DNA of 64,000 bases from Styela clava (GCF_964204865.1 NC_135259.1:5766001-5830000); one strand, 5' to 3'; positions 24,428 to 64,000 are shown, numbered from the stretch's first letter. Numbers and translations are program-made. Notes: generated by a model not told the origin, from the sequence alone.

Positions 24428-25870
24428 TTATGCAAGCAGATTGGAAGCAGATCTCCATTCACCTATACCATACTGAATAGGGGTCTGAAAAAGGGCAAAG
24501 TATACAGTTTGCTGGGTTGCTGTATGCGTGTTCCATTTTAGTTGGTTGTCGATAAAAACCGCCAGTTGTTTATATGAGTTGACAACTTTCATCGCGATAC
24601 CCTTAATTTTAATTGAGATGTTTGAATGTTTAGTGCGAGGTTTGGGGTTGAACAACATAACTTTTGATTTATCTACGTTAACTGTAAATTTGTTGCATAT
24701 CATCCAATCATAAATTTTGGTGATTTCAGTGTTCACCTTGATTTGAAGCATATTCAAGTCTTTTGCACTGGCAGGTTGGCACGCATCGTCAGCGAATAGT
24801 TTGGTTAAGAAATTGAAGCAAGACGACAGATCATTTATCGCGACAAAGAAACCAAGAGGTCCTAATACCGATCCTTGAGGAATTTCGCAATGGATGGAGA
24901 CGTTTGGGAATTTACCTCCACAAATTGTTGTCGACCAAACAGGTAATCGCAGAATTAGTTGCCCGCAGCACCTCGAAAACCAAGGTGTCTTAGTTTTTGT
25001 GAAGACATACTGTGATTTACAGTGTCCAATCCTTTTTTGAGATCTAGGTAAATACAACATACAAACTCTCCTTTGTCAAGCTTTTCATGAATATAGAAAA
25101 TTAAATCTAAAGTTCCATGGTTAGATGAATTAAAAAAATGCCTGAGCACAGGTGATATAATATCAGCGAAAATTTTTAAAATGTTGGATGGAATACCATC
25201 GGGCCCAACTGCTTTCCCCTTTTTCAGGTTTAATATTATCTGGAGAATCTCCGTGGGTGACGTAGGATCAAAAAAAAAAGAATTTTGCAAGAGAGCACCT
25301 CGGAGATTGTCTGCAAGTTTTTTCCCTAATGTGGAATAGAATTTATTGAATTCACTGGCAACCGTGACTGCGTCTGACACAATGATTCCGTTTTCAAGCT
25401 TCAATTCTGAGATGGAAGTGTCATCTCTGGACTTAATCCTAATAATGTCATTGAAAGTTTTTCATGTGTGGTTTACATTTCCTCGGTTGTTCTGGAGCAT
25501 ATTACGATAAAACAGTTCTTTTGATTTCCTCTGCAAATTACCCAACATATTTCTTTACTTTTTGAAATGGGCACGCTCACCACTCAGGAATCTATTTTTG
25601 TACATTTTATTTTTTTGTTTGATGGATGTCCCCAAGTGATCCAAGTTTTGTAGAAGAGTTTGTTTTCTCTGCGTATTAAGGGTCGTAAAGGAGCATGTTT
25701 GTTGATTAATCATTTCATGTCACCGAGGAAAGTATCAAAAGAGTTATTGAAATTTTCCTTACAAAGAATAGCTTTTGTGGAGTTGTTGCACAATAACGCA
25801 ACATCGTATCTAAAAGAGTCACTAGAAAATGATCCACTAATTATGCAAAAAACCACTGTAGTTCATCGCC
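24428..25870 (-). mobile_element. Truncated, frameshifted LINE reverse transcriptase (CR1/L2-like)
   Basis: Motifs K(A)VGPDGI, YLDLKKGLDTVNH, PQGSVLGP, LFADD, NVDKSK and LKWNTH are spread over several frames. Confidence 0.9.
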
Positions 25871-33738: not shown

Positions 33739-36700
33739 TCACCATCCACTTGCTCCAGCTCCCTTGTCTCTTAGGTCCGAATATGCATTGATTTGAGATT
33801 TTGTAATTTGGATTCCATTAACGCGGGGTTTTGCAATCATCGTTTTCTGTAAGACGAGAAACAAATTTATTTTCATGAAGAAAAATGAATAATTTTCTAC
33901 ACTTTTGAATTGAGCTAATGGAACTTTTAAAAGCGATTGGCCGAATAGTTTAAAAAAAAATCGAATTTTCTTCCAATAATAAGAACAAGTCAGCAAAACG
34001 ATCTAAATATTTATTGCTATAAACTATTTTACTTTTCATTTACTCATAATAGTTTATTTACTTCAAAGCCAGCAATTTTTGTCGTAAGTATCTCGCTACA
34101 ATTTATTTAACTTTTGCATTGATTTATAAATTCGTTACTCAACTTACAATATTATGTCCGATTTTCCGTAATTTTTCCACTACTCCTGGAACGAAACCTC
34201 CTTCATATTCCATGTAATCCGGTATCAAACTGTCGTGCAGTCTTTTTTCTTTAATTGCAGACGTGATGTCTTCATCGGAACCAAAGTATAATAACCTGAA
34301 TTAAATCAAATCATCTTGTTATATTTTATTGTGTACTTAGTGCTTTAAATCTTCATTTTTGCCATGAATCATGCATTATACATTTAAAGTTATTCCCGCT
34401 GTAAATTTAATACCGAATGATACGCACAACCTTCATGATATCGGAAGAGAGCAAGACTCAAATACATATAACTTCGCCAGTGCCAAGTATATCGTACCGA
34501 CAGTTGCTCAACTTCACAAGGTTACCTACCATATGCTATTTATGGACCAGCACTGCTTGTCAATATCTGTCATCCCATTTCATGGAATTATAAAATAGAA
34601 ATACAGAAGACACTTCCATCTTTATTTATTTTGCCACAATTACAACAACACGAAAAACTAATAAAAAAACGATTTACGGGTTCGGTTCGTCTCAAGATGC
34701 ATTTCCATCACTGATGGAAATTGAGCGACAAATTTCTATTTTAATTTGTTGTGGGTTTTGATTTTCACAGAACATTTAGCCCTAAGACGTCGTCTAAAAT
34801 TCAATTTTTCCAAACACGTTAACACGAAAATGAGGTATTTTAAGGCTTCATTCATTTCATCAGGCTGAAGCCAAAAATAGTCACGGTAAATGCGAGTCGC
34901 GCTAAATATTCAATTAAATATATTTATTACCAACAAAAATTTGCCGCAAACAACAAATTTATTTTGTAAGACGCGTATAAAGTATGATATGAAATCTCTA
35001 TTTATAGCATCTAAAACAACTCTACCTGAGTAATACTTGTGCAACAGATGTTGGAATCCTCAATCCACCAGCTCCTCCGATGACGAATACTGGTTGTTGG
35101 TTATTATCCAGCAATATCGCTGGAGTCATGGATGATAAGGGACGTTTTCCGCCTTCTATTTGGTTTTCTGCATATAGCTCAGAGTCGTGAGCAGGATCTC
35201 CAGCTTATATAATATGGACACAGAATTATTATTTTCATTTTTTGCCTTCAATTCAGGAACTCTTGAACTGATAAATAAAGAATTATTTCCTCGACGATTA
35301 GTTAGACAGAAATCTATTCGTAAAATTTTGAATATATGGAAAAAATGACAACTTTTATCTTAACCAAAAAAAAAAGAAACATGCTTATATGCATCACTAG
35401 TAGCTGAACTGGAATAGAAAGACAAACTCACTTGGAAATGAAAAATCCGCCATATTATCGTTAAAAATAACTCCAGTTGATGGTGATATTACATACGACC
35501 CCCATGCGTAGGCAATGGTGGATGTGATTGCAACAGCATTTTTATTTTGATCAAGAACTGATAAATGTGAAGTAGATGATTCTGTAGGTTTCATAAATTT
35601 TGCGCCGTAATAAGCAGGATCATGAAAAGTTCTATCACTGAATATTTTACTTATAGTCTCCTTTGCAAAGTCTCCAGATACTATTTTATCTTCTATAATC
35701 TGGGCTTGAGAAGCAAAGATTGGGTCACCCATGCTATACCGTGCTCCATAAGCATGTCGGAATGATTCTATTGTTCTTTGCCATTGAATTGTTGCATTGC
35801 TCTGGTAGTCTTGTGGAGTGATGCCAAAAAGGTCCATGACAGATAGTATCGCTCCTAACACCGGACCTCCCATAGGTAACGGGGATGCGTGCATTGTGTA
35901 ACCCGCATTTGGAAGTGGAATTTTTATTGATGGATTTTCAATGACATCATAATCCTGATAAATATAAAATATAAATTTCAAGCAATTTGCGAACGTTACA
36001 ATGCTGTAAGTCTGAATAAGTATTTGACATCCTAGGAATGCTACCTTGTTTAGTTTACATCGGCAGGCTGTGTCATATATATATCTCATCTATTATTACC
36101 CTACTTTACTAGGGTAATCAGAGTAGCAAGTTGGATTACTTTTTCAGCCCATTCCCAGTCCTAAATAACCTTTTTTTACCGATTATCTCTACAATTTTGT
36201 AACAATATTGTTGCATTTCTTACTTATATCTCATCATAAACTAACCAACAAATCTTTCTTGGTTATGATACCTCCTTGACCCAGAATTTCATCAATTATT
36301 TGATCTGCTATTTCACCATTGTAAAATACGTCTACTCCATATTGCTGAATTTTTGTCAACGTTTCAGCAAGCAGAGGATTTTTTACAGTATCGCCTTCCT
36401 GCTTCATCTAAATAAAAGCATTAAATTTTCGATAAAAATTGTTGGTAGTCCAGTCACCAGGAAACAGAATCTGAGATGGCCAGCTTCCAAGGATGTCAAT
36501 ATTTTATTCAGTGGTATGTTGCATGCAGCGCCGGATCAACCATTAAACAATATAAGCACGTGCTTAGCGCGACAAGCAAAGAGTGGCACCACAGAAATTT
36601 TTATAGCATGATTTTATATAGTTTATCGGTGTTTATTTAAAATATTACGAGTTCACCATACGACTCAAACTTCGAAATGTTTGCCTATTTTTTGTCTTCA

Positions 36701-45818: not shown

Positions 45819-46639
45819 AACTTCCCCCTGTACGGAGCATTGATAACCTTAATCTGATTTTTTCCTCGCTAAGTGATGAGAGGCTACTATTGATGGCATC
45901 GCCGCTTAAATATCAATTTAAATTCCATGCCCACTCCTCACCCAGAGTGGTGTAAATTGGATAGACAATGCTGAACTACAGAAATTGCCGTCTTTACACA
46001 AACTATAGTTTCTCCTTAAATAGCTGTGTGTTGTGCGCAGCCTTGTTCGGGGCAAAAGCCGCATAAATACTTCGTAAATAAAAAGAAATATCAAACGAAC
46101 AAATCCACCTTTTATATATTTTATTTGCAAAAAATAAACGAAATGAAATGTCTTGCACTCATACATTATAATTTATTGAACGTCAAAATTAGATAAAATA
46201 TCAAATTCGACATTATTGAACAGTCGAAAAAAAACACGTTTCAAATTATATGTTTGCTATTGTATATATTGCTACAGTATATATATAACTTTTACTGGCC
46301 AACCGATACGCTTGCAAATTTGCAAACGTGAAACACAGTACAACAGATGATAAAAATTAACTTGACTTAAATCTATTTGCTTATACTATATATAACGTTC
46401 GTGATTCTTAACTATATTTCATATTTTTACAACTCAAAAAATGAATATGCTCGAAAAATTAACAAAAAAGCCAGAATAAATAGCATAAATACAACAATTG
46501 TCATTCGGATAAAGCGGTTTACAAATAAAAATTTTCGAAAGTACTTGACATATGGCACACTGTCTATGATGAACACCGAATACTACAAACTTGCTACATC
46601 GGACATCCCTTTTGGATAATATATTCTGTTACAAATATA

Positions 46640-49600
46640 TCATCGTGGCTCAACAATCATTTTTCCCGTTTCAGGCCTCATTGTCAAAGCGTACTCAGTC
46701 GCTGGTAGTCCGGGATGGTCGGGATGCATTGATAGTTTACAATTTCTTATGATTTCGGTTGTATAAAGAAACATTTCTATCTTTGCGAGTAATCTTCCTG
46801 GGCAAATTCTTCTTCCCATACCAAACAAGACAACTTGATCGCCGATTTCCTTACGAAACTCACCGTCTGCATCCAGAAATCTCTCTGGTCTGCAGTTATA
46901 AAAAATGGTTTAGTAATTAAATTATTAACCGATTTTTTTACTGAAGGGAATGTTTCATACGGTATGTCATGAAAAATCAAAAATCCTTGACCCTAGTTTA
47001 TCATTTGTGGTGGAATAAATTATATTTGAAACAGACGATCTGATTATTACGTTTCAGATGGAATTTAGGGATTATCCCTAAGTACAGAACCCAGATTATT
47101 AGAAACATATTCTAGAGAGAACCGTCCAATATTACTTTTGGGTTTAATCATATGCAAACACAAGTTCAAGTGTTAAAGAAATTTTCTTCATTTTCGCAAA
47201 GTAATTAGGAAATTATGGATTCTGTTATTACTTATTTGGTTCACTCTCTTATGTCTGACTACGAATTGTGTGATATCTTTCGATAAAATATACTTCTTCC
47301 TGTTTTGAAACGCTTATTTTATTAACAAATGCTTGTTACTTACCGGAAATGGTCTGGACTATTCCAAGTCAACTCCTCATGATTAATTGACCATTGGTTT
47401 ATAAATACGATAGTTCCACGAGGAAGGTCATATCCAAGTAGGCGGACGTTGTCACGGGTCACTGCATGAGGTATTGTGAAAGGAACGAACGATGAATGAC
47501 GCAATACTTCGTGGATAAATGCATTTGTGTATGGAAGCTCGTGTCGATCAGCAAAGCTGTTGAAAATTTAGAAACATTTTGATTTTATTTAAGAAAAACA
47601 AAAAAATGAATGATGGATTCAAAGCAACGACGACGTGAATTGAATTTTAGATGTACAAAAGTAAAGTTAAGCAAAATGGTTATTCCGTACTTTATTGATA
47701 CAGTTTATTTGGTACTCCCGAAGTATGTGAACCAAGATGGCGGACACCGGAACGTAGAATGTGTACCAAGATAGGGTTATGCCATAATTTCATGTACAAA
47801 TACTACAGGAGTCACTTGGCTAGTCCCCAAACTCGTAAAAAGAACTAGAAGAAATTGGAATAAAATTATGGCCTAACCCTAACCTGGTACACATACTACG
47901 TTCTGGTGTACGCCATCTTGGTTCACATACCTCGGGAGTACCATTTATTATGTATTTTCGTTTTTTTTTTTTAAATTTAAAATACAGAATAAACACAGTC
48001 ATAAGAAAAGCAATAAAATTTCTAGTTCTCTTTACCTCGGATTCTTTTTGTTTCGGCCAATAAACGAATCAATTTCATGCTTTATTTTTTCTTGAGCATC
48101 TTCAAACACGGATGCGTAAACGAAAATCCACATCAGAGCTTTTGCTACGGTGTCAAATCCAGCACCCATCAGATCAATTGACTATAAACAAAATAGGTAA
48201 GTGAAAATATATTTTTTATAATAATGTAAATTTGTGCTATATTTTAATTGAGTTAATTTGAAGATTTAAATATTTGAAAGTTCGTGTATTCGTAACCATG
48301 CACTGATTAACTGTCCCCATGCCCGAACTAGACTTGTCACATAAAAGAAAACAGCGAGCCGCCATGTGACTGGCCATCTCCCCCTCGCCAGGATTAAATA
48401 TGGGAATTATTAATCACTTACGACTAAAGAAATCGGTCAATTTTAGTTATCACGAGAGAGAAACACAATATTGAATTCAAGCGTAGTTGTATGCTCGTTA
48501 GAATATCACTAAATTTTTCGTCTTCTGAGTTAGTTCATGGAAAATGTTTCTACCAACTAATCTCATGCAACTAGTACCTCCAATGCCTTTACTTCATACT
48601 TACGCTAAAATGGCTGTAAATTATCATTAGCTGTATTACTGGTACGTATATTGTTAGCGTTTTTGCTCTGAATTGCTCAATAGTTCTAACAATGATATAT
48701 AAATTATTACCGTGTTCATAATGTGCTCGTCCTTGAAGAGAGGATTATTTTTGTATTTCCTACATTTCATAATCAATCCGTCCAGCACATTTTTCGGTTC
48801 ATGTGAAACATTTTCCTGGCCATAAACTTGATCAAAATTTTCCATATGAGTTTTGATATTATCGTGCATGAAGCTGAAACATGAAAATTATTAATAGTTT
48901 TATTTTTAATCAAAAATATGTGATGAAGATACGAAAACAAAAATAAGCTAACTTACTCATAAAATTTTTTTGAAACGGCAATGAAGTTTTTCAGTATTCC
49001 GGGATAAATCTTTCTGACCCATGGCATCATGTCTGATATTGACGATGCGGATTGAAATTTGCTGAATTCATTGGAGCTGTCAATCACAAACTTTATCTGT
49101 GAATCACCTGGTGCATAACTGAAAAGAAAAATGAGAGTTTTATATTAAAACAGAATGACATGAAACCTAGTTTCTGGCAACGCTAGTTTTTACCGTGGAT
49201 TATACCTATTGGTCACTGGTAAATAACCCGAAAAGATAGGTAACCATTGGCTGTTTATCTGGAAATTGTTTGAAATCGGAACAAAGGAATACAAAGGAGA
49301 AACCGTTCAAGTAACTATATCTAAAGTGAAAACTTACCGTTCGCCAAACATGAAAGAGCAGAATATGTTGCACGTCGTCCATGCGATGTTATTAAATGTA
49401 CCAGTCATTTCATCATCTGATGTAATAACACCGTGCTCTTCCTCTTTTGATCCATTTTCCTTCTGTGATTTTATTAGTCTGTTAGAAAGATTAGATATTT
49501 CTTCTTTGATAATCTGCTCCACTATTGACTTAGGCCTTGCTGCAAATTTGTTGTTGTTTTCGTCAGGCCTGACCTTTTTCAGGGCAAAGTCACTGAGAGC

Positions 49601-50023
49601 ATCAACGATTAACTTTCGATATCTTTTGTGTTCGTCTACCGGCATTGAAGCGAATGCAACGCTGTGACCATCGCATATGTATTTAGTTGAGTGCATTTCA
49701 GGTCTTGAAATAAAATCTCCAGATTGTTTTACCAAGGCTTGCTTGATAGCATCTTTACCATTTACCACAATGACCATTCTGGAACCGAGTTTGAGACGAT
49801 ATACGGATCCGTACTTCTTGGCAAACTCAGTCATAGTGAGATGTGGATTCGGCCCAAGTTGAAGTATGTTTCCGATGATTGGCAATCCCCTGGGACCTGG
49901 CGGGAGCTTGAGTTTCTTGCTGCGACGCAAGATGTACCGCACAAGCAACAAAATGGCGGTGAAAGCAAACGATAGCCGGAAAGAACCGGCGAATGCGGAC
50001 AAGACATGTGGAAGGAAATACAT
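46640..50023 (-). CDS. Cytochrome P450, CYP1 family-like (6 coding exons)
   Basis: Exons 49338-50023 (TM anchor, PPGPRGLPIIGN), 48957-49118, 48711-48873, 48036-48181 (I-helix DLMGAGFDT), 47344-47556 (K-helix EVLRHSSFVPFTIPH, FINQWSINH), 46640-46889 (PERF, heme FGMGRRICPG). AGFDT and SSFVPFTIPH are CYP1 signatures. Confidence 0.92.
47711..47942. mobile_element. Palindromic MITE in CYP1 intron 4
   Basis: ~80-bp TIRs ggtactcccga...tcgggagtacc, with attt on both flanks. Confidence 0.85.
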
Positions 50024-50081
50024 TGCTCGACGGTCGCGAGAGAACGATGAGAAATTGTGTCTCGATTCGATACGAGCTTCG

Positions 50082-50192
50082 TTTTATACTTATCTGCGCA
50101 CGCGACGATCAGTTTTGCGGTCAACTTTTACACGCTAATTTGCCACAAAATGTCCGCCCTTAATTCTCTCCTATTCATTCACAAATTCCAAT
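50082..50192 (-). promoter_or_regulatory. CYP1 core promoter: TATA box, two proximal XREs, GC box
   Basis: On the - strand: TATAAAA at 50082-50088 (~60 nt upstream of the ATG), TCGCGTG 50099-50105, TAGCGTG 50131-50137, GGGCGG 50154-50159. ccaat on the + strand at ~50188. Confidence 0.7.
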
Positions 50193-53100
50193 CTTATTCC
50201 GTTTTTGTAAATATGCTTAGGGCAAGATCGTAAACGCTATACAATAGAGTCTAAAATATTACGACGAAGGCGGTGTTGATTTTGTTAGAATTGCAAAAAA
50301 TATTTAAAGGCAATTAAAGAAAGTTTTACGAAGAATAAGAAGTCTCAATGACACTGCAAAACATACACCTTATACACGAATATTGGATAGGATTGAGTAA
50401 GGCAAATGTTTTGCATTACAAGTTTACAAATTTATTCTGTAACTTTTCGTCTGACCAAAGTCGTCAGCATTGCCCAGACAAGCACACAACCAATTTCCCA
50501 TTAACGTTGTTTTCATAATTTATAAAATCATTAGTAACCGCATTCCCAATTTATCATATATAGGATGTTCTTATGAGTCGTTTTTACATCCTCAGACCTC
50601 GGCCAAGGCTTTTTTACGATATCCACTGAGACATAGGAAGCGGAACTTTTCCCGTTTGGCATTGATAGGTTACTATCGTACACACCTATTGGACTCTCAT
50701 GTCCATTTATTTGATACCCTACATAGAAAAATTTACGTTATGAAGATATAGGACAGTCTGAAAAAGCAGACATAAATATGTTCATGGTTAGGTGGATGTT
50801 ACGGTTCAATTTAAAACTATCGACGGGATTCAATGCAATAGGGCCCCGTTAATATGGAATATAGTAATTAGTTTCTAAAATGGTCAAACATGGTGTGAAC
50901 TGTAAAGTACCCGTAAGCTGCAGTTTGACACATACTTAGCTATTAGTTATAAGTATCACGACAGTTTCGGCCTTGGTTAACGAATTACATCCCTGGGTTA
51001 TCAATCCCACCGTCGTTAATATTTCGCGTGTGAACAATAATTGTTTTGATGCCCGACATCTCCGTGTAAAGGTTTTATTCATACATGGTCAGTGGATGGA
51101 TGCTTTCTATTTTTAAATACGAGAGAGATATCTTGAGATTACATGACCAGAAGAAATCGTACTGCCGTAATCGCACGATTGAATTCGACTCTCGCACGCG
51201 AACAATCATTCACCACACGCAATAATTATAACAATCTCACCGCATTGCGTGTGAGACAATACTCGCGGGAAATTTAAAATGGAAGAAGAGTCGGCAATTT
51301 ATTTGAATTACATAAGATTTAGTAATAATTAATATCATTAGACGAGAACAATCGCGTGAGAAATTTAGAACCATTAAAAACCAATGTTAGAGATTCTAAC
51401 CGTTCGCTAAAAAAGTTTGTGATCATGGAGCATATGTACCATAATCGTATATTTGAAATAGATATTTCCACTTTTTGTACAGCCTCGATTATTTTCAATA
51501 TCATAATTAAAGTGGGCATTTATGTATCATTAAACGACATATTCAGTTTTATTTTACATTTGCTTCGCCTGAATAAAAGAAATTGTGACTCATCCATTTA
51601 AATCTATTTAGAGACGCGAAACCTTAAAAAATTTGCTATCTAAAAGTCACGTAGGGTCAAAAACTAAAATTTATAATAGTAAAGAAGGTTAATAATTCTA
51701 CTTCAGCAAATAAAAAATATTGCGAGCTGCTCTGTTATTGTCGCACCTTCTATCTTACTTCAATCGGGATTAAAATAAATTTAAAACAGATCAGGAAATA
51801 GTGATGGAGCAATATTTCAAATCAACAAGAATTAAAAAGCATCTATGTTTGATATGAAGTATATTGATTGTCATCTATTTGGTTCGTTGCTAAAAATACT
51901 TAGAAACAAACCTCGAACCAAATCATTTTCTACAAAACGGATGCGTCGATGTAGATAAAGTGGCTGATAAGACCTCGTTTTGATAAAAGGAAGTCAATTT
52001 TAATTCGTCATTGTTAAATCGCTGATGTTCTTGTCACAAACATGCGGGAGATTTAACTTCGCACGCAAGTTTTTAAAGTAGTAGTGCAACTTGAGTGCCA
52101 CAGGCAAGTATATGCTAATTTATAACCAAACTTGTCTTGTTTTTGTCACGTTAGGGCCCTACCACTTCATCTATCATGTCTGTTATATTAATAATATCTG
52201 TAACGGTATAGGGTTGAGTAAGTCTAATTGAGAACAACACATCTTATATTCGTAAGTGTTTGAACAAGATTGAATGTAAGAAAATTGTCCTATTTGCACG
52301 GATTTTACGAGCGCAATGATTCATTCAGATAAAGCACGCGAGTGTCGATGTTTTGCATTCGTCCTCACGCAATATATGTTTAAATATGTCGACCAATAGT
52401 CGGAATAGTGATAAGTGGCCAAGAAAAAAATGTGCTCAAAATACTTAAAAAATACAGTATACCCGATAGCTTAGAATGCAGTTGGATAAATGGTTTCAAT
52501 AAGCATTTTAATCACCTCTTTTGTAATAGGCATTTGCACTGCCGTATAGACAGCGGTTTTTGTGTTTGTCACCACGCAACATTTGTTTTACAAGTCGAAT
52601 AAAAAATGAAATACTAGTAATGGGCCAAAGAAAAAAAATCGCTCAAAATATTATACCTAAAACGTGAAGTTATTTTAAGTCGTTCAGCAAAATGTGTAGT
52701 GGGCCTGTATTACACGTTCTGATTCGTAAATGGGCCTCTTTTCATTCGGGATCCCGATACGAATCAGAAACTAGCCGTCGTAAAAAAAGGTTCTTACATC
52801 ACCGCGATTAACACTTTGAAAAATAAAAACGGGATTTTGTGGGTTAATCTGTAAATCCCATAATACTTTGGATCACTTTTTATCTTAAAGATTTAATTTC
52901 ATTACCCCTCCGGAAAAAATTTGCGAGAAATCGTGCGGAACTTAGATTTTCTTGTTTGCACGAAATGGTATTGTTACATCTATTTGTTTCAAGAACTGGA
53001 TTAGAAAATTGTGTTGCATGCGAATGATTGCGTGCTTGAACATAATTCTCTCGTTTCATCTGCACGCAAACCCAGGTACTTTGAGGTCGTTTTTCTCTCC

Positions 53101-53403
53101 TTTCGGAAGCGAACTCACGCGAATAATAACAATAGGATGACAACAGACATGAAGAGTTTCTTCTCAATGTTCACGATAATTGAATTTAGTGACTCTAAAA
53201 ACGATTGAACAGTGGTTACAAATAAACTTTTTTTGAATTTTCTGATTGAATTCTCGCTCTTCCGATACCAGAAACCGCAACAACTTTACCATGGGCATAA
53301 ATTATCTCCAAACAGCAAAAATTCATTTACATTTCAAAACAAGTGGAAATGATCCAGTAGTTTGATATTACAAACTAATTTTTTAAAATTCTGGATTTCG
53401 GTT

Positions 53404-53575
53404 CGGCCCCACCACTTCATCTATCATGTATGTTATATTAATAATAGCTGGAACGGTCTAGGGTTGAGTAAGCCTAATTGACAACAACACATCTTATATT
53501 CGTAACTGTTTGAACAAGATTGAATGAAAGAAAAATGTCATATTTGCAGGGATTTTACGAGCGCAATGATTCATA
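53404..53575 (+). repeat. ~170-bp local duplicate of 52155-52325
   Basis: ggccc.accacttcatctatcatg...acgagcgcaatgattcat is present at both positions. Confidence 0.85.
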
Positions 53576-54436
53576 AATATGCATTAAATTTGATAACACA
53601 ATGTTAGTCACGCAATGTATCACAAAAAGTAAAATATTTAAAAAAACATTTCCAATCATTTCATTTAATATAAATGACAAAAAATTTATCTGACATGACT
53701 ATTGCGTGTCTGAATCAAATTAGAATCTATGGTTTCTCGAAGTAATATGCTAATTACTCTGCGTAGTTTTAAAATATTCTGAGAAAAACATTTCGTTTCT
53801 CACGCGATGTCACTAATAGCAGAACGATTTCCGATCGTCCAATATATCTGTCTGATCGTAACTTTGTCTTCAAATTTATGCTTTGTCACTCTAAAAAAAT
53901 AATGTGTGCCTGCTTTTCTTTTTTGAATTATTGTATCAAAATGTGTCATTTATCATATTTCAGAATTAAAACAGTTAAGAAACAAATGGATAATCATATA
54001 ATTTTATTAGTGGTTTGATATAAAAAAGATAACCTTCAATAAACATCTGATTTTACTGTATGAAAACATTTACTGCAAATCTGATAGAATTAATAGTAAT
54101 ATTATTGAATCAATGTGATTGAAATTTCAAAATTGTCGATTTCCTTCACAATTTCAAAATCAACTGTCTCACCTTAGAACATGATTAAATAAAGAAAAAA
54201 ATATATTCGAGATTGTTGAAATCTTGTAAATTTACCATAAATATGGGAATTGCAAACAAATATTTTTAAACAGAGAACATCAAAGGAATCATACTATGAA
54301 ACTAGTTCAAACCTGAAGCTATACAGTACTTCATTTCATTTGAATAAAAAAAAAAATTGCAAAAATTTATTTATACCCACAAAAATAAATGAGTACGAAG
54401 AGTACACAGAATTTCACCACGAAATTTGTGTATATG

Positions 54437-54902
54437 CAGGGCTGCCAAGGGCTACCTCCTTATTTCTAAGACTTGTCCTTATTTTGACATGTGTCCTTAT
54501 TTTGGTCCTTATTTTTATGGGTAGAGGTCCTGATACCAGGCACTTAGATTGGTCAATTCCAATGACTGATTTTCTAGAAATGATATTTTACGACCTCATT
54601 GATTACCACGCGCAATCTTTACGTAATAACCGCAAATTAATTGACACAGTGACAAAACAATAGCCTACCGGCCAAAATCAGTTCGTGTAACTTGAATCCA
54701 AATACAACTTGGAAATGAGATGGAACAGATTGTTTATATGAATAAAGAACTGCTGGAGCAAATCTTTTCTAGTGCAAAGTATGACTAGACACGGGTCGCA
54801 CTGGCACGAATACATTTTGTTTATTACATTTCGTTCTTTGTTATTCTATTATTATTTTTTCCTGATGTCCTTATTCTTGGGTTCATATCGATGGCAGCCC
54901 TG
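54437..54902. mobile_element. hAT MITE inserted in duplication copy 1 only
   Basis: TIR cagggctgcca / tggcagccctg, TSD tgtatatg/tgtatata. The empty site is visible in copy 2 at ~59960. Confidence 0.9.
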
Positions 54903-57707
54903 TGTATATATATATTGTCTTATTATCATGATCATCGATATACGTTACATAGAGGCTTAAATCTACGCCCGGTAAATGATATACGAAGTGTACATAGCGG
55001 AAATAGAATGAAGTATAAGATTCACAGCAGAGTAAGAAATACTCCATACTGAATTTTTTCAGTTTTTTACAGGAAAAAAATTCTAAACAAGAAATGCGAT
55101 TTATATCGCAACCATTCTGGGTAAAAACAATTAGAAGAGAATAATTCTGAGCTAATTTATAGGTTACTAACGAAATCCGAATAACTAGGGTGGTGCATTA
55201 TGCTGGAGTATGTATGTTTTTCTTAATTTGAACACAATTTCGAACTGGAATCTAGTTGAGGGTGAACTCTGTGACTATATGTGTACATGATGATTACTGA
55301 AAATGAAATGCAACACTACTCTGAATACCTAAGATTAGTCGATTAAGCCGTATTAGTATGTTTTGCATGAAATGTTGTGTTGCTTGCAGCTAGGTTGAAA
55401 ACAAATTCATTTGCTAAAACCTGAATATAAACGCTGAGCTACGGTCCAGCCTTGAAAAGTTTTAGAATAACTTTGTACAATGGTAAAGCCGCGGAGTATA
55501 TTCTATTTTTATTTCAAATTTGAACCAGAAATGTCTTTGTGACTCTTAATATGTGATCTTCTTTTTTTTTGGAAAAAATATTGTTTTATTCACTGTTAAA
55601 ACGCCTATGACTAACTCTGGCTGTGAAGTCTGAATAGCCGACTTCCTATATATATTAATTTGTTTGAACGTGGAAAGGTCATTTAACGAATATGTATTCT
55701 TTGAAGTTCAAAATCTAACAAACTTATAAAAATCATTGTGATTCATTCAAAAATCAATAGCGTTATTCTTTCGTGAAGAAGGATAATTCAATTTATCGGA
55801 TCAACCAATTAATATGGAAAAACAAACGTCCACTCCCACTAACACGAGCTCAAACCAAAATGGCGGATCAGATTCAAACAACGGTTTTACAAGTCGTGTT
55901 TCGCCCGCGGCTGTAACGCAAATCTCGGTCTGGGAAATGCATAAATTTCCATTCGTTGCGTGCGAACTATTCTAGCTTTAAACATCATTTACAAGTTCGG
56001 CAACCCTGATTATAGAATGATAATCAAACATCTGTCTTGTTTTCCGCGACATTGCGTGCAGACGATGACCGCACAAAGAACCACTACATCAAACTTCTTA
56101 GAAAAGCTACTTCCGAAATATCATAGAAAAATTAACATTCATTTCTTTTACCAATTATGAACTGTGAATAAAGTTAATATCCAGATCCGGTTTACAATTG
56201 GCCCATAAGTATTAAACGATATTAACGAGTTAAATAAAGAATTCTTTTTCTTGGATCTAATAACGGTCACAACATCTCGTGCTAATTCAGTCAATAACAG
56301 AGATTATCACGACCACGAAATACATCATCTTAACTATTCATATCATCACACGTCAAGTTTAGAGAATACCAGGCCGACATTTTTGCTTTTTCGAAGAAAG
56401 CATGACATATTATGGAAAGTATTTTTGACATTGTCTTTATACAGATACAGTATTTCGAAGCTTTTTTATTTCAAGTTTGAAACACTACCCCTTGTAAAAA
56501 AAATCAATTTTGTATAACTCTATTATGAGATTTGCAATTTACCATACAATTTTATTTAATCTTGGGGTATCCTTGCAATAATACGATAACATAAATGCAA
56601 GAAAAAAAGAATCGTTATTTGCCACCAAATCGAGTGACCATTGGGTTTCGCACAAACGACGTTTTCATTATCTGTGTTTTTGAGAAAAGTGATTTTTATG
56701 AATCTGAAGTTTAGAATGCGAAAAGTTGTTGTATATAATTAGGAGCGCTTGCCAAAAAAGTCAGTCTGACAAATAGACTGGATTATTTTTTTTTATTCTA
56801 TATCAGTGAGACCTTTGCTGCTGCATTAACGCTGATAGATATTTTATATTGGGTTTATATTTCCTAACTTTCAAATAAATACACGGACTACCGGTACTGG
56901 TTTCATCTTACAGGTTACTCCTATTACGAGACTTAATGAAGTTCATAATTGAGAACAGAGATTCACAAGCATATGTAGATGAAAATATGTAGAATTGTAG
57001 AGTAATGCAGTTGCAAAGTTTTTAAGACACGGGAAATTTTCGGGAATGGCATCCCAATCACGCAAGCAATAGTTCGTTTTGTTCACTTCTCTCTTGTTAC
57101 CCTCCCTAATCGCTTATATTTCTTTCGAAATCAATTTATAACAGTTAGTTAGCAAGTGACTATAACCAACGTGGGCTTTACAACTTTTAAATCAAGCAGA
57201 AATGACGAAAAAGGGTGCTGGCACAGACGATCTATATTACGTAAAAGTGTGACCAAATGAATGCTGAGCTTTTCTCGACAAAATTTCGCGAGAGCTCACT
57301 CATTTGTTACGTCAAAATTTATTCTTTGTAGCCAAATGTCATGAAAGGACAAAAAGAGTTTAAATAAATACCGGATTGTTAACAATCGATAATGAACAAA
57401 CGAACACCTATTTTCATCAGATAATTCATAGTCTTGAAACTTTTTATATAAAATAGAATGATCTCGTTTCCGAGGCCTCGCTCGCGTGCCGAATAAATGG
57501 GCTCACGTGCCAAGTTTGGCACGCCTGCGAGGGGTTGCCCACCCCTGGCTTAAACCATTCCCAACTCTTCACGTTCCTGCTCGAGCACGACTACTGGCGG
57601 ATAAAGTAAGCGATAAAAATCTTCTTAGCTCCGAGAATAGTTGCCACAGCTAAAATCAGACTGCAAGAAACAAAACCATTTCTAAAAATTGCAGCAAAAG
57701 CAACAAA

Positions 57708-60700
57708 GTTTTGCGTTTGTCATCACGCAATATTTGTATTACTGTGTCGAATAATAGTCGGAATACTGATAATAGGCCAAGACAAAATGACGCTTGAAAT
57801 ATTACATGAAAAACGTGGAATTTTGGTGAGTTGTACAGCAAAATGTATAAAGGCCCTATATTAAGCATTCTGAATCATAGGGGGCCTCTTGTTATTAGGA
57901 ATCCCGATACGAATCAGAAACTAGCCGTCGTAAAATGAGTTCTTACACCACCACAATTAACATTTTAAAAAAAATTTTTTTTGTGAGTTAATCTGTAAAT
58001 CCCAATAATACTTTGGATCACTCTTCATCTTAAAGATTAAAATTTCATTCCCTCTCCGAGAAGAATTTGCGAGAAATCGTGCGGAATTTGGATTTTCTAG
58101 TTTGCACGAAATGGTATTGTTGCATCTATTTGTTTCAGAACTGGATTAGATGATTGTGTTGCATGCGAATGATTGCGTGATTGAACATAATTCTCTCGTT
58201 TCATCTGCACGCAAGGTACTTTGAGGACGTTTTTCTCTCCTTTCGAAAGCGAACTCACGCGAGTAATAACAATAGGATGAAAACATGCATGAAGAATTTC
58301 ACATCATTGTTCACGATAATTGAATTTAGTGACTTTAAAACCGATTAAACAGTGGTTACAAATAAGCTTTTCTAAAATTTTCTAGTTGTTGTCTCGCTCT
58401 TTCGCTACCAAAAACTGTAACGTGAACGGCAACTCGTTTACATTTTGAAACAAGTAAAAACAATCCAGTAGTTTGATATTACGAACTAATTTTTTCAAAA
58501 TTCTCGATTTCGGTTGGTAACGCAATTTTGTGATTCAATTACACTTGCATTTGTATCCGAGTGTGCCATTCAAACACACAAGAAAACGCTCCTTCCTCAA
58601 CATAATACATGCAAATAATTTTCAAGCACTAAAAGTAAAATAAAATTTACAAAATATTTTAGTTTGAATTGGTTCAGATCATTGAATAAATATTACAAAA
58701 TTCTTGTTTTTTCATCTAATTTTAATAGGTTAACGTCGGTCGCATTGTCGGATGGACAGCAGCATAGTGTCCTCATATTTTTTACCAGTAATAATTTTAA
58801 ACTTTTATTTTCACCTGCTTTTCCACTCAAATAATAAATTCCATTAATCTTGTAAGAAGTACTTGACGAAATATACAAAAAGTGGTTCGATAAATATGAA
58901 TACAAGCATATAGTAAATTCCTCAACCAGTAAAATAAATAGCTATACATCAATGTTCGCCTGTATGGAGTTAAAAAAAATAGACATCGGTAAAAATGGCA
59001 TAGAATTTGATAACACAATGTTAGTCACGCAATGTATCATAAAAAGTAAAATATTTTGGAAAACATTTCTAAACGTCCATTAGCCATTTATAAAATCATC
59101 GGTTAAACTACTCTCATGTAATTAGGTATTATTTTTAAACAAGTTTTGCTTTTAAAAGTCATTTCGGATTATAAAAATGACAAAAACTTACCTGACATGA
59201 CTATTGCGTGTCTGAATCAAATTAGAATCTAGGATTTATTTGAAGTAATGTTTTAATTACTGTGCGTAGTTTTAAAATATTCTGAGAAAAACATTTAGTT
59301 TCGCACGCGATGTCACTAATAGCAGAGCGATTTCCGATCGTCCAATATATCTGTCTGATCGTAAATTTGCTTTAAAATTTATGCTTTGTCACTCTGAAAA
59401 AATAATGTGTGGCTGCCTTTTATTTTTGAATTATTGTTGCATCAAACAATTATCATTTACCACATTTCAGAATTAAATCATTCAAGAAACGAATGAATAA
59501 TGAAATAATTTTTATTAGTGTTTTGCTACAAAAGACAACAGAGAATATACATCTGTTTTTACTATATGGTCACTTTTACCGCGAATATAATAGATTTAAT
59601 AGTAATAATATTGAATCAATGTGATTGCAATTTTAAAATTTTAGATTTATTTCACAATTTCAAAATCAACGGTTTTCTCATTTTAGAAGTTGACTGAATA
59701 TAAAAAAATATTATAGATTGGTGAAATCTTGTAAATTCACCATAAATATGGGAATCAAAAACACTGTTTTCAAACAATAAACATCAAAGAAATCTCACTA
59801 TAATAAAATATTGTGCTTATCCTTCTTAGACGAGAAACTAGTTCAAAACTGAAACTACCAAATGCCCGATTTTATTCGGAATAAAAAAATTGCAAAAATC
59901 TATTTATACCCACAAAAATAAATGAGTACAAGGGGTACACAGAATTTCACAACAAAATTTGTGTATATATATATTGTCTTATTATCATGATCATTGATAT
60001 ACGTTATATAGAGCCCTAAATATAAGTCCGGTAAATCATATACGAAGTCCATAAAGTGAGAACAGAATGAAGCGTGAAGATTCACAGAGTAGGAAATAAT
60101 CCATACAGATTTTTTTTTAGTTTTTTTACAATAAAGAAATGTGATTTACATCGAAATCATTCTGAGTAAAAAATAAAAGAGAATATTTCTGAGCCAATTT
60201 ATGGGTAACTACTGAAATCCGATGAACTAGAGTGGTGCATTATGCTGGAGTATGTATGTTTTCTTAATTTGAACACAATTTCAAACTGGAATCTAGTTAA
60301 GGGTGAACTCTGACGATATATGTACATGGTGATTACCGAAAATAAAATGCAACACATCCCTGAATACTTAAGATTAGTCGATTGTGCCGTATTAGTATGT
60401 TTTGCTTGAAATGTTGTGTGGCTTGCAGATAGGTTGAAAGCATATTTATTTGCTAAGACCTGAATAAAAACGCTGAGTCACGAAAATTTTTTTTTAACTC
60501 TATATACAATGGTAAAGTTTGCAAAATAGAATCTGTCTTCATTTCGAATTTGAACCAGAAATGTCTTTGCGCCTCTTAATATGTGATGTAAGCACACGAG
60601 CACTAACGATTTATTCAAAGATGTTTTTAAAAAATCATTTTTTTTTTGGAGAAGATATTATTTTATTCACTGTTAAAACGCTGTTGTGCACTGTTTATAT

Positions 60701-61469
60701 CAACTCTGTTTGTGTAGTCTGAATAGCCGACTTCCTTAGAAATTAATTTGTTTACACGTAGAAAGCATAGCATATGATATTAGAATAAATTATATTGTTT
60801 ATTTGTGGGAAAATGCACAAGTAATGATCTTTTACGAATATGTATTATTTGAAGTTTAAAATCCAACAAACTTATAATAATCATTGTGATTCATTTAAAA
60901 ACCATGAGCGTAATTTCTTTTTTAAAGAAGAGTAATTCAACTTTTCAGATCAATCAATTATAGAAAAAACGACCACTCCCACTAACACGATCTCAAAACC
61001 AAAATGGCGGATCAGATTTCAACAACGGTTTTACAAGTTGTGTTTCGCCCGCGGCTGTAACGTAGATCTCGGTCTGGGAAATGCATAAATTTCCATTCGT
61101 TGCGTGCGAACTATTCTAGCTTTAAACATCATTTACAAGTTCGGCAACCCTGATTAGAGAACGGTAATCAAACTTTTGTCTTGTTTTCTGCGACATTGCG
61201 TGCAAACGATGACCGCACAAACAACCACTACATCAAACTTCGTAGAAAAGCTACTTCCGAAAAATTATACAAAAATTAACGTTTAGTGCTTTTACCAAAT
61301 ATGAACTGTAAATAAAGTTAATTTTCAGATCCGGTTTACATCAGGTCCATAAATATAAAACTATATTTATTTCTGGGATCTAATCAAGGTCACAATATCG
61401 CGTGCTAACTCAGTCAAAAACAGATATTAGCACGACCACGAAACACATCATTTTACCTATTCATATCAT
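57708..61469 (+). repeat. Tandem segmental duplication, copy 2
   Basis: Collinear with 52556-56347. Confidence 0.92.
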
Positions 61470-64000
61470 TTCGTGATGAATATATATATATATATATTTC
61501 TATTTTATCGATTTGGTCGACAACACGAAGTTATTTTCGCTGTATTTGGGCGATTTTTGGGCCACAATTTGTTGTCGCCCAAATAGTTTGGGCTTTATTT
61601 TCTACATAAATCCCTCAAGCAAAAAGTGAAACTTTTCGTCATTTTCAACATTACCCTCAACTATCACCACATAATGTTGGATTTGAAATTCAAGCAAAAA
61701 AACTCTGGTTTTTGCCGACAGTTTCTAGGCCTAGCTATATCCCGTTTTGCTATTTTTGCTAAATTGTGGCTACAAAAATAAATCATGATTTTCTCTTTTC
61801 TAGCCCGGTTATCTTTTGGCCAGAATTGGAGGATTAACAAGAAAAAATTTTCGCTATCGTATGGTATTCCAATAATTCACCGGAAACTTATCTGGGACTT
61901 GCGACACTGCTATGGTATATTTCACTCTGACAAAATGTGCAAATTGCAGACGAGACATATGACGTCATATATGGTCTGCGTCTGCTCTGTCAGGAGCGAT
62001 GAGAGAAGTTGGTTTTAGTTATCGTTTTGAATCAAAGGCAATTCAGTTTGTACATAAGGATGCGGGACATGTTATTATGTAAAACAAAGGCTCTGAGATA
62101 TTGTATGCAAAGAAATAGTTTGAGATGATGTTATCACTTTGAGTCTGCAAAGTATCTCGCTACCTAATTATGGAAGACATTAAAAAATATATGGAACAGA
62201 CGTGATAGTCCTATCCAGTGCGACAGAATAGGATTTCGCAGTAAATGTAGTCTAGTCCAATATTTTTTAAAAAAAGGTAAACTTTATATTATTTTGTAAA
62301 ATAAATTTATGTTTTGTTTTCCTAGTCACAGATTTGGGAAAAAACGAAGCTGACAGAAGATCATTGAACGTGTACGGAAGTCTGTCAGAGATCAGGAAAA
62401 GGAAAACTTTCCAAGCAAACTCGAGAACATTAAAATAGAAAGTTTATAGTATATATTTATAAGATAATTTTGAGTCATTTAAAAACATGTGGAAGGAAAA
62501 CTGTTATTTGAAGAACAAAAGGTTCAATGAGGATAAGACAAGTGAATATTGTCAGAAAAGCGTAAGGTCAATCTGGAAAAAGGTAGACACAGTAAATATG
62601 GGGAAAAAGACAAATTGGTTGCATCTCTATTAATTTATTTATAAGCCAGAACTATTGTACTCTAGAAAAGGTTATCTATTACAATCCATGAATATAAATA
62701 TAAGTTCAATAAAATTTCGGCAGGAGACGCACGCACCAATCGAATTTTGTAATCTGTGTATTGGGTTTCTCATGTCTTAAAATAGGACTGACCGGATTTT
62801 GAAACCCATGCCTATTTAGCAAAAAAATAGGTTATGATATATAGCGGTTATTGTAATATATATTCTTGATTACTATGTACTTTTCGCATGCAAATGTACT
62901 TTGTTCGAACACAATTTTTTGGAAATAAATCATGTGTGACCAGGTGTATACCACCGTGCTTATTTTAGCCGGAGATGTTAAAATACAACGCTGAGTTGAA
63001 TTGTTTGTCGGTCAATGGTACAAAACAGTCACTATAAACTGCATGGTCAGCGTAGGTCATTTTGCTGTTACCGATTTTGAAAGACTGATATTGGAGTGAG
63101 GGGTGGTCATGAGACGTTATAACAGTTGAAAAGCTGGATTGGTCGTGTAAAGCTGGGCGATTTTACTTCTATATAAAGCAACGATCTGCATTGCGTTGCA
63201 ATATTGCCATATCATCTTTATTGAACATATCAAGAAATGCGCATTTACGTTTTAATATTACTCCTACGCCCCTCTCTTTGAAGTCCCAGATGAGCGATTT
63301 CATAAAATTACAAAGAGGGTAAGATTTGGGTAAGTCCCTGCACCCTTGGCACAAATAGAAATAGCTACTATGACTTCAAGTTTACTGGTGACGCGGTTTA
63401 ACTTATTATCCAGTATACTTGCGTGAATAACATACGGATCTTCCGTACAACGGCAATTTTCGTATTCTGCGAAATTTTTTATATTAATTTATGACATCAT
63501 ATCACATGAACATCTCTGCTATGACGCCAAAATTAATTTCACTCAAAAAAACCGTATGACGTCACTATAATTTTTCACATTGTCGGAAATACATAATACT
63601 AATTACATTAACTGGTGTCACTAATTTCCGACTATCAAATGAGTTATGGTAACCTCTTGTACATTATAGGCTATTTTGGACGCATCTCACTCGGAAAAAT
63701 ACATTATCTGAAAATCGGAAATCGAACACTGCGCAGTTGAAATTCAGATTACAAAGAGCTAATTAGCCCTAAAATATATTTTAACGAACAGTGGCATATT
63801 TGAAACATCTGTGATCCTTTTAGCGACAGTATTCCTAATTAACAAATGGGATAAAAATTGTTACTTAGATTAGCGGAAATGTAGGAATTAGAAAAACTTT
63901 CTATATAGGAAGACTAGGTCGCTCATGCCGATGCCGGGTTATTTCGTTTTCCACTTTCATTCCCTTTGTTCTCCAGTTTTAATTATATGATTAAGCACGG

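What the first reader, a model, noticed from the sequence alone, without database searches (positions are those of the whole stretch)
50099..63425. Dense array of ~32 AHR/ARNT xenobiotic response elements upstream of an invertebrate CYP1
Seen: about 32 TNGCGTG sites (almost all TTGCGTG or TCGCGTG, both orientations) in 13.3 kb immediately 5' of the CYP1 start, versus roughly 6 noticed in the first 50 kb. A rough base-composition estimate gives ~2 expected here, and ~22 sites remain after discounting duplication copy 2. Known: TNGCGTG is the AHR:ARNT element that drives vertebrate CYP1A/1B induction, whereas the invertebrate AHRs tested generally do not bind dioxin-type ligands. Inference: this is a strongly bHLH-PAS-driven, probably chemically inducible CYP1 enhancer in a non-vertebrate, and so a candidate for ancestral AHR-CYP1 wiring.
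Basis: partly seen in the sequence, partly recalled or inferred. Interest (0 to 1): 0.85.

Follow-up and report, generated by a model that had tools for sequence, protein, structure and literature searches.

The report
AHR-site array upstream of tunicate CYP1
A sea-squirt detoxification gene of the CYP1 family sits behind an exceptionally dense, selectively maintained array of binding sites for the dioxin receptor pair AHR:ARNT, which argues that the AHR-to-CYP1 control circuit known from vertebrates was already wired before vertebrates arose, although binding and chemical inducibility are still untested.

Summary
Of the 32, 31 are T[T/C]GCGTG. Genome-wide this motif occurs 1.42 times per 10 kb, so about 1.9 are expected. 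After removing a tandem ~5 kb duplication and one transposon-borne site, 21-22 independent sites remain against about 1.4-2 expected.

The array is not a dispersed repeat. The enrichment needs the full AHR:ARNT heptamer; sites of other ARNT partners, the reversed motif and CpG are not enriched. Nine of ten alignable sites are identical in two duplicate copies that are only 81% alike.

A paralogue on another chromosome has its own, unalignable cluster of 18 sites in 10 kb. Ten other P450 genes, including a CYP1B-like pair, have 0-1 sites in their ~1.5 kb upstream.

The gene is CYP1-like, expressed and spliced, with a TATA box 10 nt from the nearest site. The genome is a tunicate's by its cellulose synthase hallmark. 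It encodes one AHR and two ARNTs whose DNA-reading regions are identical to the human proteins.

Verdict: a real, very probably functional AHR:ARNT response-element array. The kind is known, since XREs were reported upstream of Ciona CYP1 genes in 2007. Binding and inducibility remain unshown.

The parts
50099..63425 (.). Whole array of 32 TNGCGTG sites (31 within 50099-61404, one outlier at 63419-63425); 18 in the sense of the gene, 14 opposite
50099..50137 (-). Proximal pair: TCGCGTG (50105-50099) and TAGCGTG (50137-50131), 76 and 108 bp upstream of the ATG
50082..50088 (-). TATAAAA box, 10 nt downstream of the proximal TCGCGTG and 59 nt upstream of the ATG
   Evidence: read from sequence; RNA-like contigs reach 50036-50076 unspliced
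51024..51358 (.). Module at about -1.0 to -1.3 kb with five sites (51024, 51195, 51216, 51245, 51352); three of them within 57 bp. The paralogue has a similarly arranged triple site at the same distance (suggestive only)
   Evidence: the similarity is not significant by local alignment
52062..53807 (.). Densest block: 10 sites in 1.75 kb
   Evidence: 10 sites in the 52-54 kb bin
52558..56346 (+). Tandem duplication, copy 1 (9 intact sites, one decayed to TCTCGTG at 56275)
57709..61469 (+). Tandem duplication, copy 2 (10 sites); 80.7% identical to copy 1 over 3262 aligned columns, 9 of 10 sites letter-identical
54436..54900 (.). About 450-bp dispersed repeat inserted in copy 1 only (more than 40 copies genome-wide at 80-88%); carries no TNGCGTG; not part of the regulatory array
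57470..57530 (.). Fragment of a dispersed element whose full copies carry two TCGCGTG 14 nt apart; the site at 57482 belongs to it and is discounted
49338..50076 (-). First exon of the CYP1-like gene: 5'UTR of at least 53 nt, ATG at 50023, codes residues 1-229
46500..49118 (-). Remaining exons seen in spliced contigs: 48957-49118, 48711-48873, 48039-48181, 47344-47558, 46889 down to at least 46500 (last sense codon ends at 46643); all introns GT..AG on the minus strand

Best explanation
This is a cis-regulatory array of AHR:ARNT response elements (XRE/DRE/AHRE) that controls transcription of a tunicate CYP1-family monooxygenase gene. The animal's single AHR pairs with ARNT. The pair reads T[T/C]GCGTG, with AHR on the TNGC half and ARNT on the GTG half. 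About 21-22 independently arisen sites, raised to 32 by an old tandem duplication of a 5 kb enhancer block, recruit it from -76 bp to about -11 kb. Together they drive the TATA promoter that starts 10 nt downstream of the nearest site.

Shown: the motif excess, its specificity, its preservation, the independent cluster at the paralogue, the presence and unchanged DNA-contact sequence of AHR and ARNT, and the CYP1 affinity and expression of the gene.

Inferred: physical binding, activation rather than repression, and dependence on a ligand. My estimates: about 0.5 that some small-molecule ligand (dietary, microbial or tryptophan-derived, or PAH-type) induces the gene through these sites, and 0.1-0.2 that dioxin-type ligands do.
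For: Density:
- 31 TYGCGTG against 1.9 expected from the whole-genome count.
- 28 TNGCGTG in the densest 10 kb, against 0-6 (mean 2.2) in 23 background 10-kb stretches.

Not a repeat:
- Only a 450-bp insert is dispersed in the genome. The rest matches nothing but its own tandem copy.

Specificity:
- TNGCGTG is 10.9x background.
- GCGTG without the 5' T is 0.4x, ACGTG 1.1x, TCGTG 1.6x, CACGTG 0.6x, the reversed motif 1.5x and CpG 1.1x.

Motif detail matches functional vertebrate XREs:
- N is T or C in 31 of 32 sites. PMC8708342 states that C/T at N gives stronger transcription than G/A.
- In both paralogues' sites, G is avoided at +7 (1 of 41) and preferred at +8 (20 of 41 against 17% expected, p=3e-6).

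Constraint:
- 9 of 10 alignable sites are identical in duplicate copies that are 80.7% identical. Only 36% of 7-column windows are fully conserved (P=8e-4).

Independent replicate:
- The paralogue on C14 (61-64% identical in exon 1) has 18 TNGCGTG in its 10 kb upstream, 12 of them TY against 1.4 expected (4e-8).
- The two upstream regions do not align.

Controls:
- Ten other P450 loci have 0-1 sites in about 1.5 kb upstream, against 7 and 4 for these two genes.

Trans factors:
- One AHR bHLH exon scores 82 bits to AHR chains against 31 for the next family. Its basic region is identical to human AHR in 5NJ8.
- Two ARNT genes score 529 bits. Their basic region and helix 1 are identical to mammalian ARNT.

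Target:
- The database gene model P0001 scores 312, 292 and 275 bits to CYP1A1, 1A2 and 1B1 against 203 for the best CYP2.
- The nearest Atlas clusters are chordate 'Cytochrome P450 1A'.
- Spliced contigs appear in four runs, and a TATA box adjoins the first site.
Against: - No binding, chromatin or reporter data exist for this locus.
- The ligand-binding PAS-B part of the AHR gene was not found by the Pfam scan and could not be fetched, so nothing can be said about ligand competence.
- Published invertebrate AHRs do not bind dioxin, and the tunicate Oikopleura has lost AHR and CYP1 altogether (PMC3292500).
- The flanks within 20 bp of the sites are also well conserved between the duplicate copies (93%). 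Measured against these local flanks, the motif-specific excess is only marginal (about p=0.04, my calculation).
- The CYP1B-like pair on C18 shows 0-1 sites in the ~1.5 kb visible, so not every CYP1-like gene here is wired this way.
- The apparent shared triple-site module at -1.2 kb is not significant by alignment score.
- A full genome-wide sliding-window ranking could not be done.
Confidence: 0.75

Rival explanations
1. The sites are real regulatory elements but are read by a factor other than AHR:ARNT. Candidates are a HES/Hairy-type repressor on the CACGCG (class C) version, a CAMTA-like CGCG-box binder, or an uncharacterised zinc-finger protein.
For: CACGCG is 6.8x enriched. Eleven sites are TCGCGTG, which contains it. 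No binding data exist.
Against: Twenty of 32 sites are TTGCGTG, which contains neither CACGCG nor a CGCG box. The strict need for T two bases before GCGTG, the C/T preference at N and the A/C-then-G flank fit the AHR:ARNT element. That the downstream flank matches the published extended vertebrate consensus is from my own memory, not checked here.
Confidence: 0.13
2. The excess is a neutral by-product of the locus's duplication history or of local mutation bias, and has no function.
For: Ten sites are copies made by one tandem duplication, further small internal duplications exist, and one site rides on a transposon fragment.
Against: After removing all detectable copies, 21-22 sites remain against about 2 expected. 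Sites survive where surrounding duplicate sequence has diverged by 19%. The unalignable upstream region of the paralogue is enriched too. CpG and the reversed motif are not enriched.
Confidence: 0.04
3. The array binds AHR:ARNT but serves a developmental or tissue-specific, ligand-independent programme, as with Drosophila spineless or C. elegans AHR-1. CYP1-like expression would then be constitutive in AHR-expressing tissues and not chemically inducible.
For: Invertebrate AHRs tested lack dioxin binding and have developmental roles (PMC3292500). Ciona AhR mRNA is expressed in gut, neural complex and gill without any demonstrated ligand (PMC7068557). The gene is present in all four unlabelled RNA-like runs at modest depth.
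Against: Nothing here speaks directly against it. It is a sub-case of the best explanation that differs only in ligand dependence. Arrays of this density are, in vertebrates, typical of strongly inducible genes (established knowledge of CYP1A1, not tested here).
Confidence: 0.35

Closest known systems
Vertebrate CYP1A1/CYP1A2/CYP1B1 dioxin-responsive enhancers (clusters of XRE/DRE/AHRE sites bound by AHR:ARNT)
   Same: The same heptamer TNGCGTG, the same C/T preference at N, and multiple sites in both orientations spread over several kb upstream. There is a TATA promoter, the target is a CYP1-family gene, and AHR and ARNT have identical DNA-contact sequences.
   Different: The host is a tunicate. 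The site number (32; 21-22 independent) is at or above what I recall for vertebrate CYP1A loci (memory, not checked here). Part of the array was built by tandem duplication of a 5 kb block. Ligand dependence is unknown. No AHRR-type feedback partner was sought.
Putative XREs upstream of the Ciona CYP1E/CYP1F genes (Goldstone et al. 2007, Mol Biol Evol 24:2619, as summarised in PMC7068557)
   Same: A tunicate CYP1-family gene with AHR-type elements upstream, proposed as evidence that AHR may transactivate CYP1 before vertebrates, and functionally untested.
   Different: I could not read the 2007 paper, so the number and statistics of the Ciona sites are unknown to me. New here are the genome-calibrated excess, the specificity controls, the preservation test across duplicates and the replicate at a paralogue. 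The species and family (a stolidobranch, by earlier notes Styela clava) differ.
CYP1-like genes of the annelid Capitella teleta (CYP3060A1, CYP3061A1)
   Same: Invertebrate CYP1-like genes that were searched for TNGCGTG in the 10 kb upstream.
   Different: Capitella has one site per 10 kb, i.e. background, with q-value 1 (PMC4229089). The two genes here have 28 and 18.

Membership tests
AHR:ARNT response-element (XRE/DRE) enhancer | Core heptamer TNGCGTG present in several copies near the regulated promoter, above background | tested here: met
   32 sites, 31 TYGCGTG against 1.9 expected from the whole-genome count; nearest site is 76 bp from the ATG
AHR:ARNT response-element (XRE/DRE) enhancer | Enrichment specific to the AHR half-site, not shared by sites of other ARNT partners or generic CG-rich words | tested here: met
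   TNGCGTG 10.9x; non-T NNGCGTG 0.4x; ACGTG 1.1x; TCGTG 1.6x; CACGTG 0.6x; reversed motif 1.5x; CpG 1.1x
AHR:ARNT response-element (XRE/DRE) enhancer | Preferred bases of functional XREs (N = C or T; flank preferences 3' of GCGTG) | tested here: met
   N = T 20, C 11, A 1, G 0, agreeing with PMC8708342. G at +7 in 1 of 41 and G at +8 in 20 of 41 sites across both paralogues. The comparison of the 3' flank with the published extended consensus rests on my memory.
AHR:ARNT response-element (XRE/DRE) enhancer | Cognate AHR and ARNT encoded in the genome with intact DNA-contact residues | tested here: met
   AHR bHLH exon L041:1324-1587(-), basic region identical to 5NJ8_A. ARNT ORFs L033:574-2316 and L034:637-2238, basic region and helix 1 identical to 8XS6_A.
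AHR:ARNT response-element (XRE/DRE) enhancer | Evolutionary constraint on the sites | tested here: met
   9 of 10 sites identical between duplicate copies that are 80.7% identical (P=8e-4 against the whole duplicate, about 0.04 against local flanks). An independent cluster lies at the unalignable paralogue promoter.
AHR:ARNT response-element (XRE/DRE) enhancer | Physical binding of AHR:ARNT to the sites | not testable with these tools
   Needs EMSA, ChIP or CUT&RUN
AHR:ARNT response-element (XRE/DRE) enhancer | Ligand-dependent induction of the linked gene through the sites | not testable with these tools
   No exposure data. The RNA-like runs are unlabelled. The AHR PAS-B domain was not retrievable.
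Cytochrome P450 family 1 (CYP1) | Closer to CYP1A/1B than to any other P450 family | tested here: met
   P0001: 312, 292 and 275 bits to CYP1A1, 1A2 and 1B1 against 203 for the best CYP2 and 189 for CYP17. Exon 1 alone gives the same order. Atlas nearest clusters are 'Cytochrome P450 1A', Chordata.
Cytochrome P450 family 1 (CYP1) | Haem-thiolate signature FxxGxRxCxG | tested here: met
   FGMGRRICPG in P0001 (sequence printed)
Cytochrome P450 family 1 (CYP1) | Nomenclature rule of more than 40% amino-acid identity to a named CYP1, and placement in a labelled phylogeny with Ciona CYP1E/CYP1F | not tested
I therefore call the gene CYP1-like.

The most novel reading that the evidence does not exclude
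Vertebrate-grade AHR-to-CYP1 wiring was already in place in the common ancestor of tunicates and vertebrates, and in this sea squirt it is ligand-inducible. By this I mean a dense, selectively kept XRE array on a TATA promoter, duplicated to raise site number. Chemical sensing through AHR would then not be a vertebrate innovation, contrary to the conclusion drawn from Oikopleura and from dioxin-binding assays of invertebrate AHRs.
Probability: 0.35. Interest if true: 0.75.

Novelty: new member of a known kind. Interest (0 to 1): 0.55.

Why it matters
It is still debated whether AHR regulated CYP1 genes, and so acted in chemical defence, before vertebrates. Invertebrate AHRs tested do not bind dioxin, Oikopleura lacks the pathway, and the XREs noted near Ciona CYP1 genes in 2007 were still functionally untested in 2020 (PMC7068557).

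This locus gives the strongest purely genomic argument I could assemble that the transcriptional link is real in a tunicate. The excess is genome-calibrated and motif-specific. It is preserved through an old duplication and replicated at a paralogue, and the transcription factors' DNA-reading residues are unchanged.

It also hands experimenters compact test pieces in an animal group where embryo electroporation and genome editing are routine. These are the 110-bp proximal promoter with two sites, the triple site at -1.2 kb, and the 1.75-kb block with ten sites.

Tried and rejected
1. Dispersed-repeat explanation: rejected. Only window 54436-54900 is dispersed, and one site (57482) lies in a fragment of a transposon that carries paired TCGCGTG.
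2. Shared conserved module between the two paralogue promoters. By eye and in MAFFT, a triple site plus a downstream TCGTGCG lie at about -1.2 kb in both. An unbiased local alignment of 3 kb against 3 kb scores 17, against a null of 17.6 +/- 1.7, so I keep it only as a hint.
3. Genome-wide cluster scan by pair pattern. The output lists only the first 100 of 394 matches and is dominated by one transposon family, so it is not usable for ranking loci.
The background therefore rests on 230 kb of sampled sequence plus whole-genome counts.
5. AHR PAS-B ligand domain: not detected by PF08447 or PF00989 near the AHR bHLH exon, even at E up to 10.
7. Goldstone 2007 and Hahn 2017 are not held in the library.
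8. A divergent neighbour gene sharing the array, as at human CYP1A1/1A2: the 10 kb beyond the window shows only transposon-like ORFs, judged by eye from their translations.
9. Other readings of the motif (HIF, SIM, NPAS4, E-box, MRE, ARE): none enriched.

Full-length searches used P0001, a database protein returned.


Full report
OBSERVATION

A pattern search finds 38 TNGCGTG in the window, 32 of them between 50099 and 63425 and six in the first 50 kb. No dinucleotide shuffle of 100 reaches 38. Twenty sites are TTGCGTG, eleven TCGCGTG, one TAGCGTG and none TGGCGTG.

I contrasted all k-mers of the last 14 kb with the first 50 kb without choosing a motif in advance. CACGCAA (the reverse complement of TTGCGTG) is the most enriched 7-mer (20 vs 2), and ATTGCGTG the most enriched 8-mer (12 vs 0).

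The region is not compositionally odd: GC is 33% against 35%, and CpG observed/expected is 1.19 against 0.99.

GENOME CALIBRATION

The window is G000:C13:5766001-5830000 of a 377-Mb assembly. The whole genome holds 53,549 TYGCGTG, or 1.42 per 10 kb. The motif read backwards is no rarer (59,201), so the word is not generally favoured.
- Expected in 13.3 kb: 1.9. Observed: 31 (Poisson 8e-27).
- In 23 background stretches of 10 kb (17 random loci, four from the window, two neighbours), TNGCGTG counts run from 0 to 6, mean 2.2. The array has 28 in its densest 10 kb.

REDUNDANCY

The array contains a tandem duplication, 52558-56346 and 57709-61469, with 3262 aligned columns at 80.7% identity. Grouping sites by flank similarity gives 23 groups. 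One further pair is homologous by alignment, and one site (57482) lies in a fragment of a dispersed element whose full copies carry two TCGCGTG. So 21-22 sites are independent, against about 1.4-2 expected (2e-19).

A whole-genome DNA search with 4.1 kb of the array finds only its own tandem copy, plus more than 40 copies of a 450-bp element. That element is inserted at 54436-54900 in copy 1 only and carries no site. The array is therefore not a repeat family.

SPECIFICITY

Relative to 230 kb of background:
- TNGCGTG is 10.9-fold enriched.
- GCGTG preceded by anything but T-N is depleted (0.4x).
- ACGTG (HIF/SIM type) is 1.1x, TCGTG 1.6x, CACGTG 0.6x, the metal and antioxidant elements 1.4-1.6x, the reversed motif 1.5x and CpG 1.1x.
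- CACGCG is 6.8x only because it is contained in TCGCGTG.

The near-exclusive use of T or C at the free position matches what a review reports for vertebrate elements, which transcribe better with C or T than with G or A (PMC8708342).

Outside the heptamer, the sites of this gene and of its paralogue share further preferences that played no part in finding them. G is almost absent at the first base after GCGTG (1 of 41). G is preferred at the next base (20 of 41 against 17% expected, p=3e-6).

CONSTRAINT

Nine of the ten sites that can be aligned between the two duplicate copies are identical in all seven letters; the tenth is TCTCGTG in copy 1. Only 36% of 7-column windows of the alignment are fully identical, and ten random windows reach nine in 0.08% of trials.

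The 20 bp on either side of the sites are also better kept than average (93%). The sites therefore sit in conserved islands, and against these flanks alone the excess is marginal (about 0.04 by my calculation).

REPLICATE AT A PARALOGUE

The genome has one close paralogue, on C14 (61-64% identical in the first coding exon, ATG at C14:7157306, minus strand). Its 10 kb upstream (L014) carries 18 TNGCGTG: 12 TY (expected 1.4, 4e-8) and 6 TAGCGTG, two of which lie in the inverted ends of a small element.

Sensitive blastn and Smith-Waterman find no alignable similarity between the two upstream regions. The enrichment is thus maintained, or gained, independently of the surrounding sequence. Both genes show three sites in the same order about 1.2 kb from the ATG, but this resemblance is not significant.

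Ten other P450 first-exon loci have 0-1 site in their ~1.5 kb upstream, against seven and four for these two genes. Two of the ten (C18, 20 kb apart) look CYP1B-like; I tested one, which scored 110 bits to CYP1B1 against 60 to CYP2. The wiring is therefore a property of this gene pair, at least proximally.

THE GENE

The first coding exon is 49337-50023 on the minus strand. The database holds a 539-residue model, P0001, identical to it over residues 1-229. I used that protein as returned and joined no exons myself.
- P0001 scores 312, 292 and 275 bits to human CYP1A1, CYP1A2 and CYP1B1, against 203 to the best CYP2 chain. Exon 1 alone gives the same order.
- The protein atlas places it beside chordate 'Cytochrome P450 1A' clusters.
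- It keeps the haem signature FGMGRRICPG.
- Contigs of four runs of one study lay on the locus as a spliced transcript of six exons with GT..AG introns. They run unspliced from the ATG exon to 50036-50076. The gene is therefore expressed and the ATG exon is the first exon in these data. Contigs cannot give a true start or a level.
- A TATAAAA box lies at 50088-50082, ten nucleotides downstream of the proximal TCGCGTG (50105-50099). A TAGCGTG lies 25 nt further up.

THE FACTORS

A back-translated AHR basic-region signature hits the genome once, at C13:21456026-21456049. The exon around it scores 82 bits to AHR chains and 31 to the next family, and reads KSNPSKRHRDRLN, exactly as human AHR crystallised on DNA (5NJ8).

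Two intronless ARNT genes (580 and 533 residues) score up to 529 bits to mammalian ARNT. They are identical to it through the basic region and first helix. The predicted DNA target of the pair is thus unchanged.

Inducibility therefore cannot be judged from sequence here.

THE ORGANISM

Earlier notes of the scan call the genome the sea squirt Styela clava, which I treat as a lead. Independently, a cellulose-synthase match and a GH6 match lie 2 kb apart on one strand of C9. This is the fused CesA layout that, to my knowledge, is peculiar to tunicates among animals. The CYP1 and ARNT affinities are also chordate.

COMPARISON WITH WHAT IS KNOWN

Clusters of XREs upstream of CYP1A1, 1A2 and 1B1 are the textbook AHR target in vertebrates.
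- Ciona: Goldstone et al. 2007 reported XREs upstream of the five CYP1 homologues. A 2020 paper states that whether Ci-AhR activates them was still unevaluated (PMC7068557). I could not read the 2007 paper.
- Capitella: CYP1-like genes have one site per 10 kb (PMC4229089).
- Oikopleura: it lacks AHR and CYP1, which led its authors to doubt a pre-vertebrate defence role of AHR (PMC3292500).
- This species: I found nothing on AHR, ARNT or CYP1 promoters.

The finding is therefore a new and unusually strong member of a known kind, not a new kind.

VERDICT

The reading as an AHR:ARNT-driven CYP1 control region is well supported by sequence evidence (0.75). Chemical inducibility and actual binding remain to be shown.

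Noticed in passing
window 57470-57530; genome-wide, e.g. G000:C1:1989355-1989382: A dispersed element carries two TCGCGTG 14 nt apart (TCGCGTG-CCGAATAAATGGGC-TCGCGTG). It supplies a large share of the 394 same-strand motif pairs in the genome (control 135). A mobile carrier of paired XRE-like words could seed AHR sites near genes.
   Followed up: partly
window 47700-47950 (intron of the CYP1-like gene): Summed contig depth of 20,000-46,000 in four RNA-like runs, against about 10 on the exons, with many variant joints and loose ends. This is an extremely abundant repeat or small-RNA-like sequence family.
   Followed up: no
L033:574-2316 (C6:11.36 Mb) and L034:637-2238 (C13:20.66 Mb): Two full-length ARNT genes, each a single uninterrupted ORF (580 and 533 aa). 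They look like an intronless duplicated pair, possibly retrogene-derived.
   Followed up: partly
L006 and L007 (C18:6898451 and 6918672, plus strand): A tandem pair of further P450 genes that look CYP1B-like. L006 was tested and scored 110 bits to CYP1B1 against 60 to CYP2; L007 was judged by eye. They have 0 and 1 TNGCGTG in the ~1.5 kb upstream that could be seen.
   Followed up: partly
window 54436-54900: A roughly 450-bp dispersed repeat with more than 40 genomic copies at 80-88% identity, inserted into duplication copy 1 after the duplication.
   Followed up: partly
L014:5474-5525 and 6252-6303: 52-bp inverted repeats (92% identical) about 730 bp apart upstream of the paralogue, each holding a TAGCGTG; probably the ends of a small DNA transposon.
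   Followed up: no
G000:C9:16177457-16180164 (+): Cellulose synthase (PF03552) and glycoside hydrolase 6 (PF01341) matches lie 2 kb apart on one strand: the tunicate CesA gene.
   Followed up: partly
window 24428-25404 (-), 28932-29405 (-), 35397-36089 (-): Reverse-transcriptase-like ORFs (LINE) and two exons that look like gamma-glutamyltranspeptidase paralogues. Judged by eye from the ORF translations and not searched.
   Followed up: no
L013:1407-3555 (-) and 9030-9572 (+) (window-equivalent 65400-73600): Beyond the array lie transposon-like ORFs, judged by eye from the translations and not searched. No obvious divergent host gene shares the array within 10 kb.
   Followed up: no
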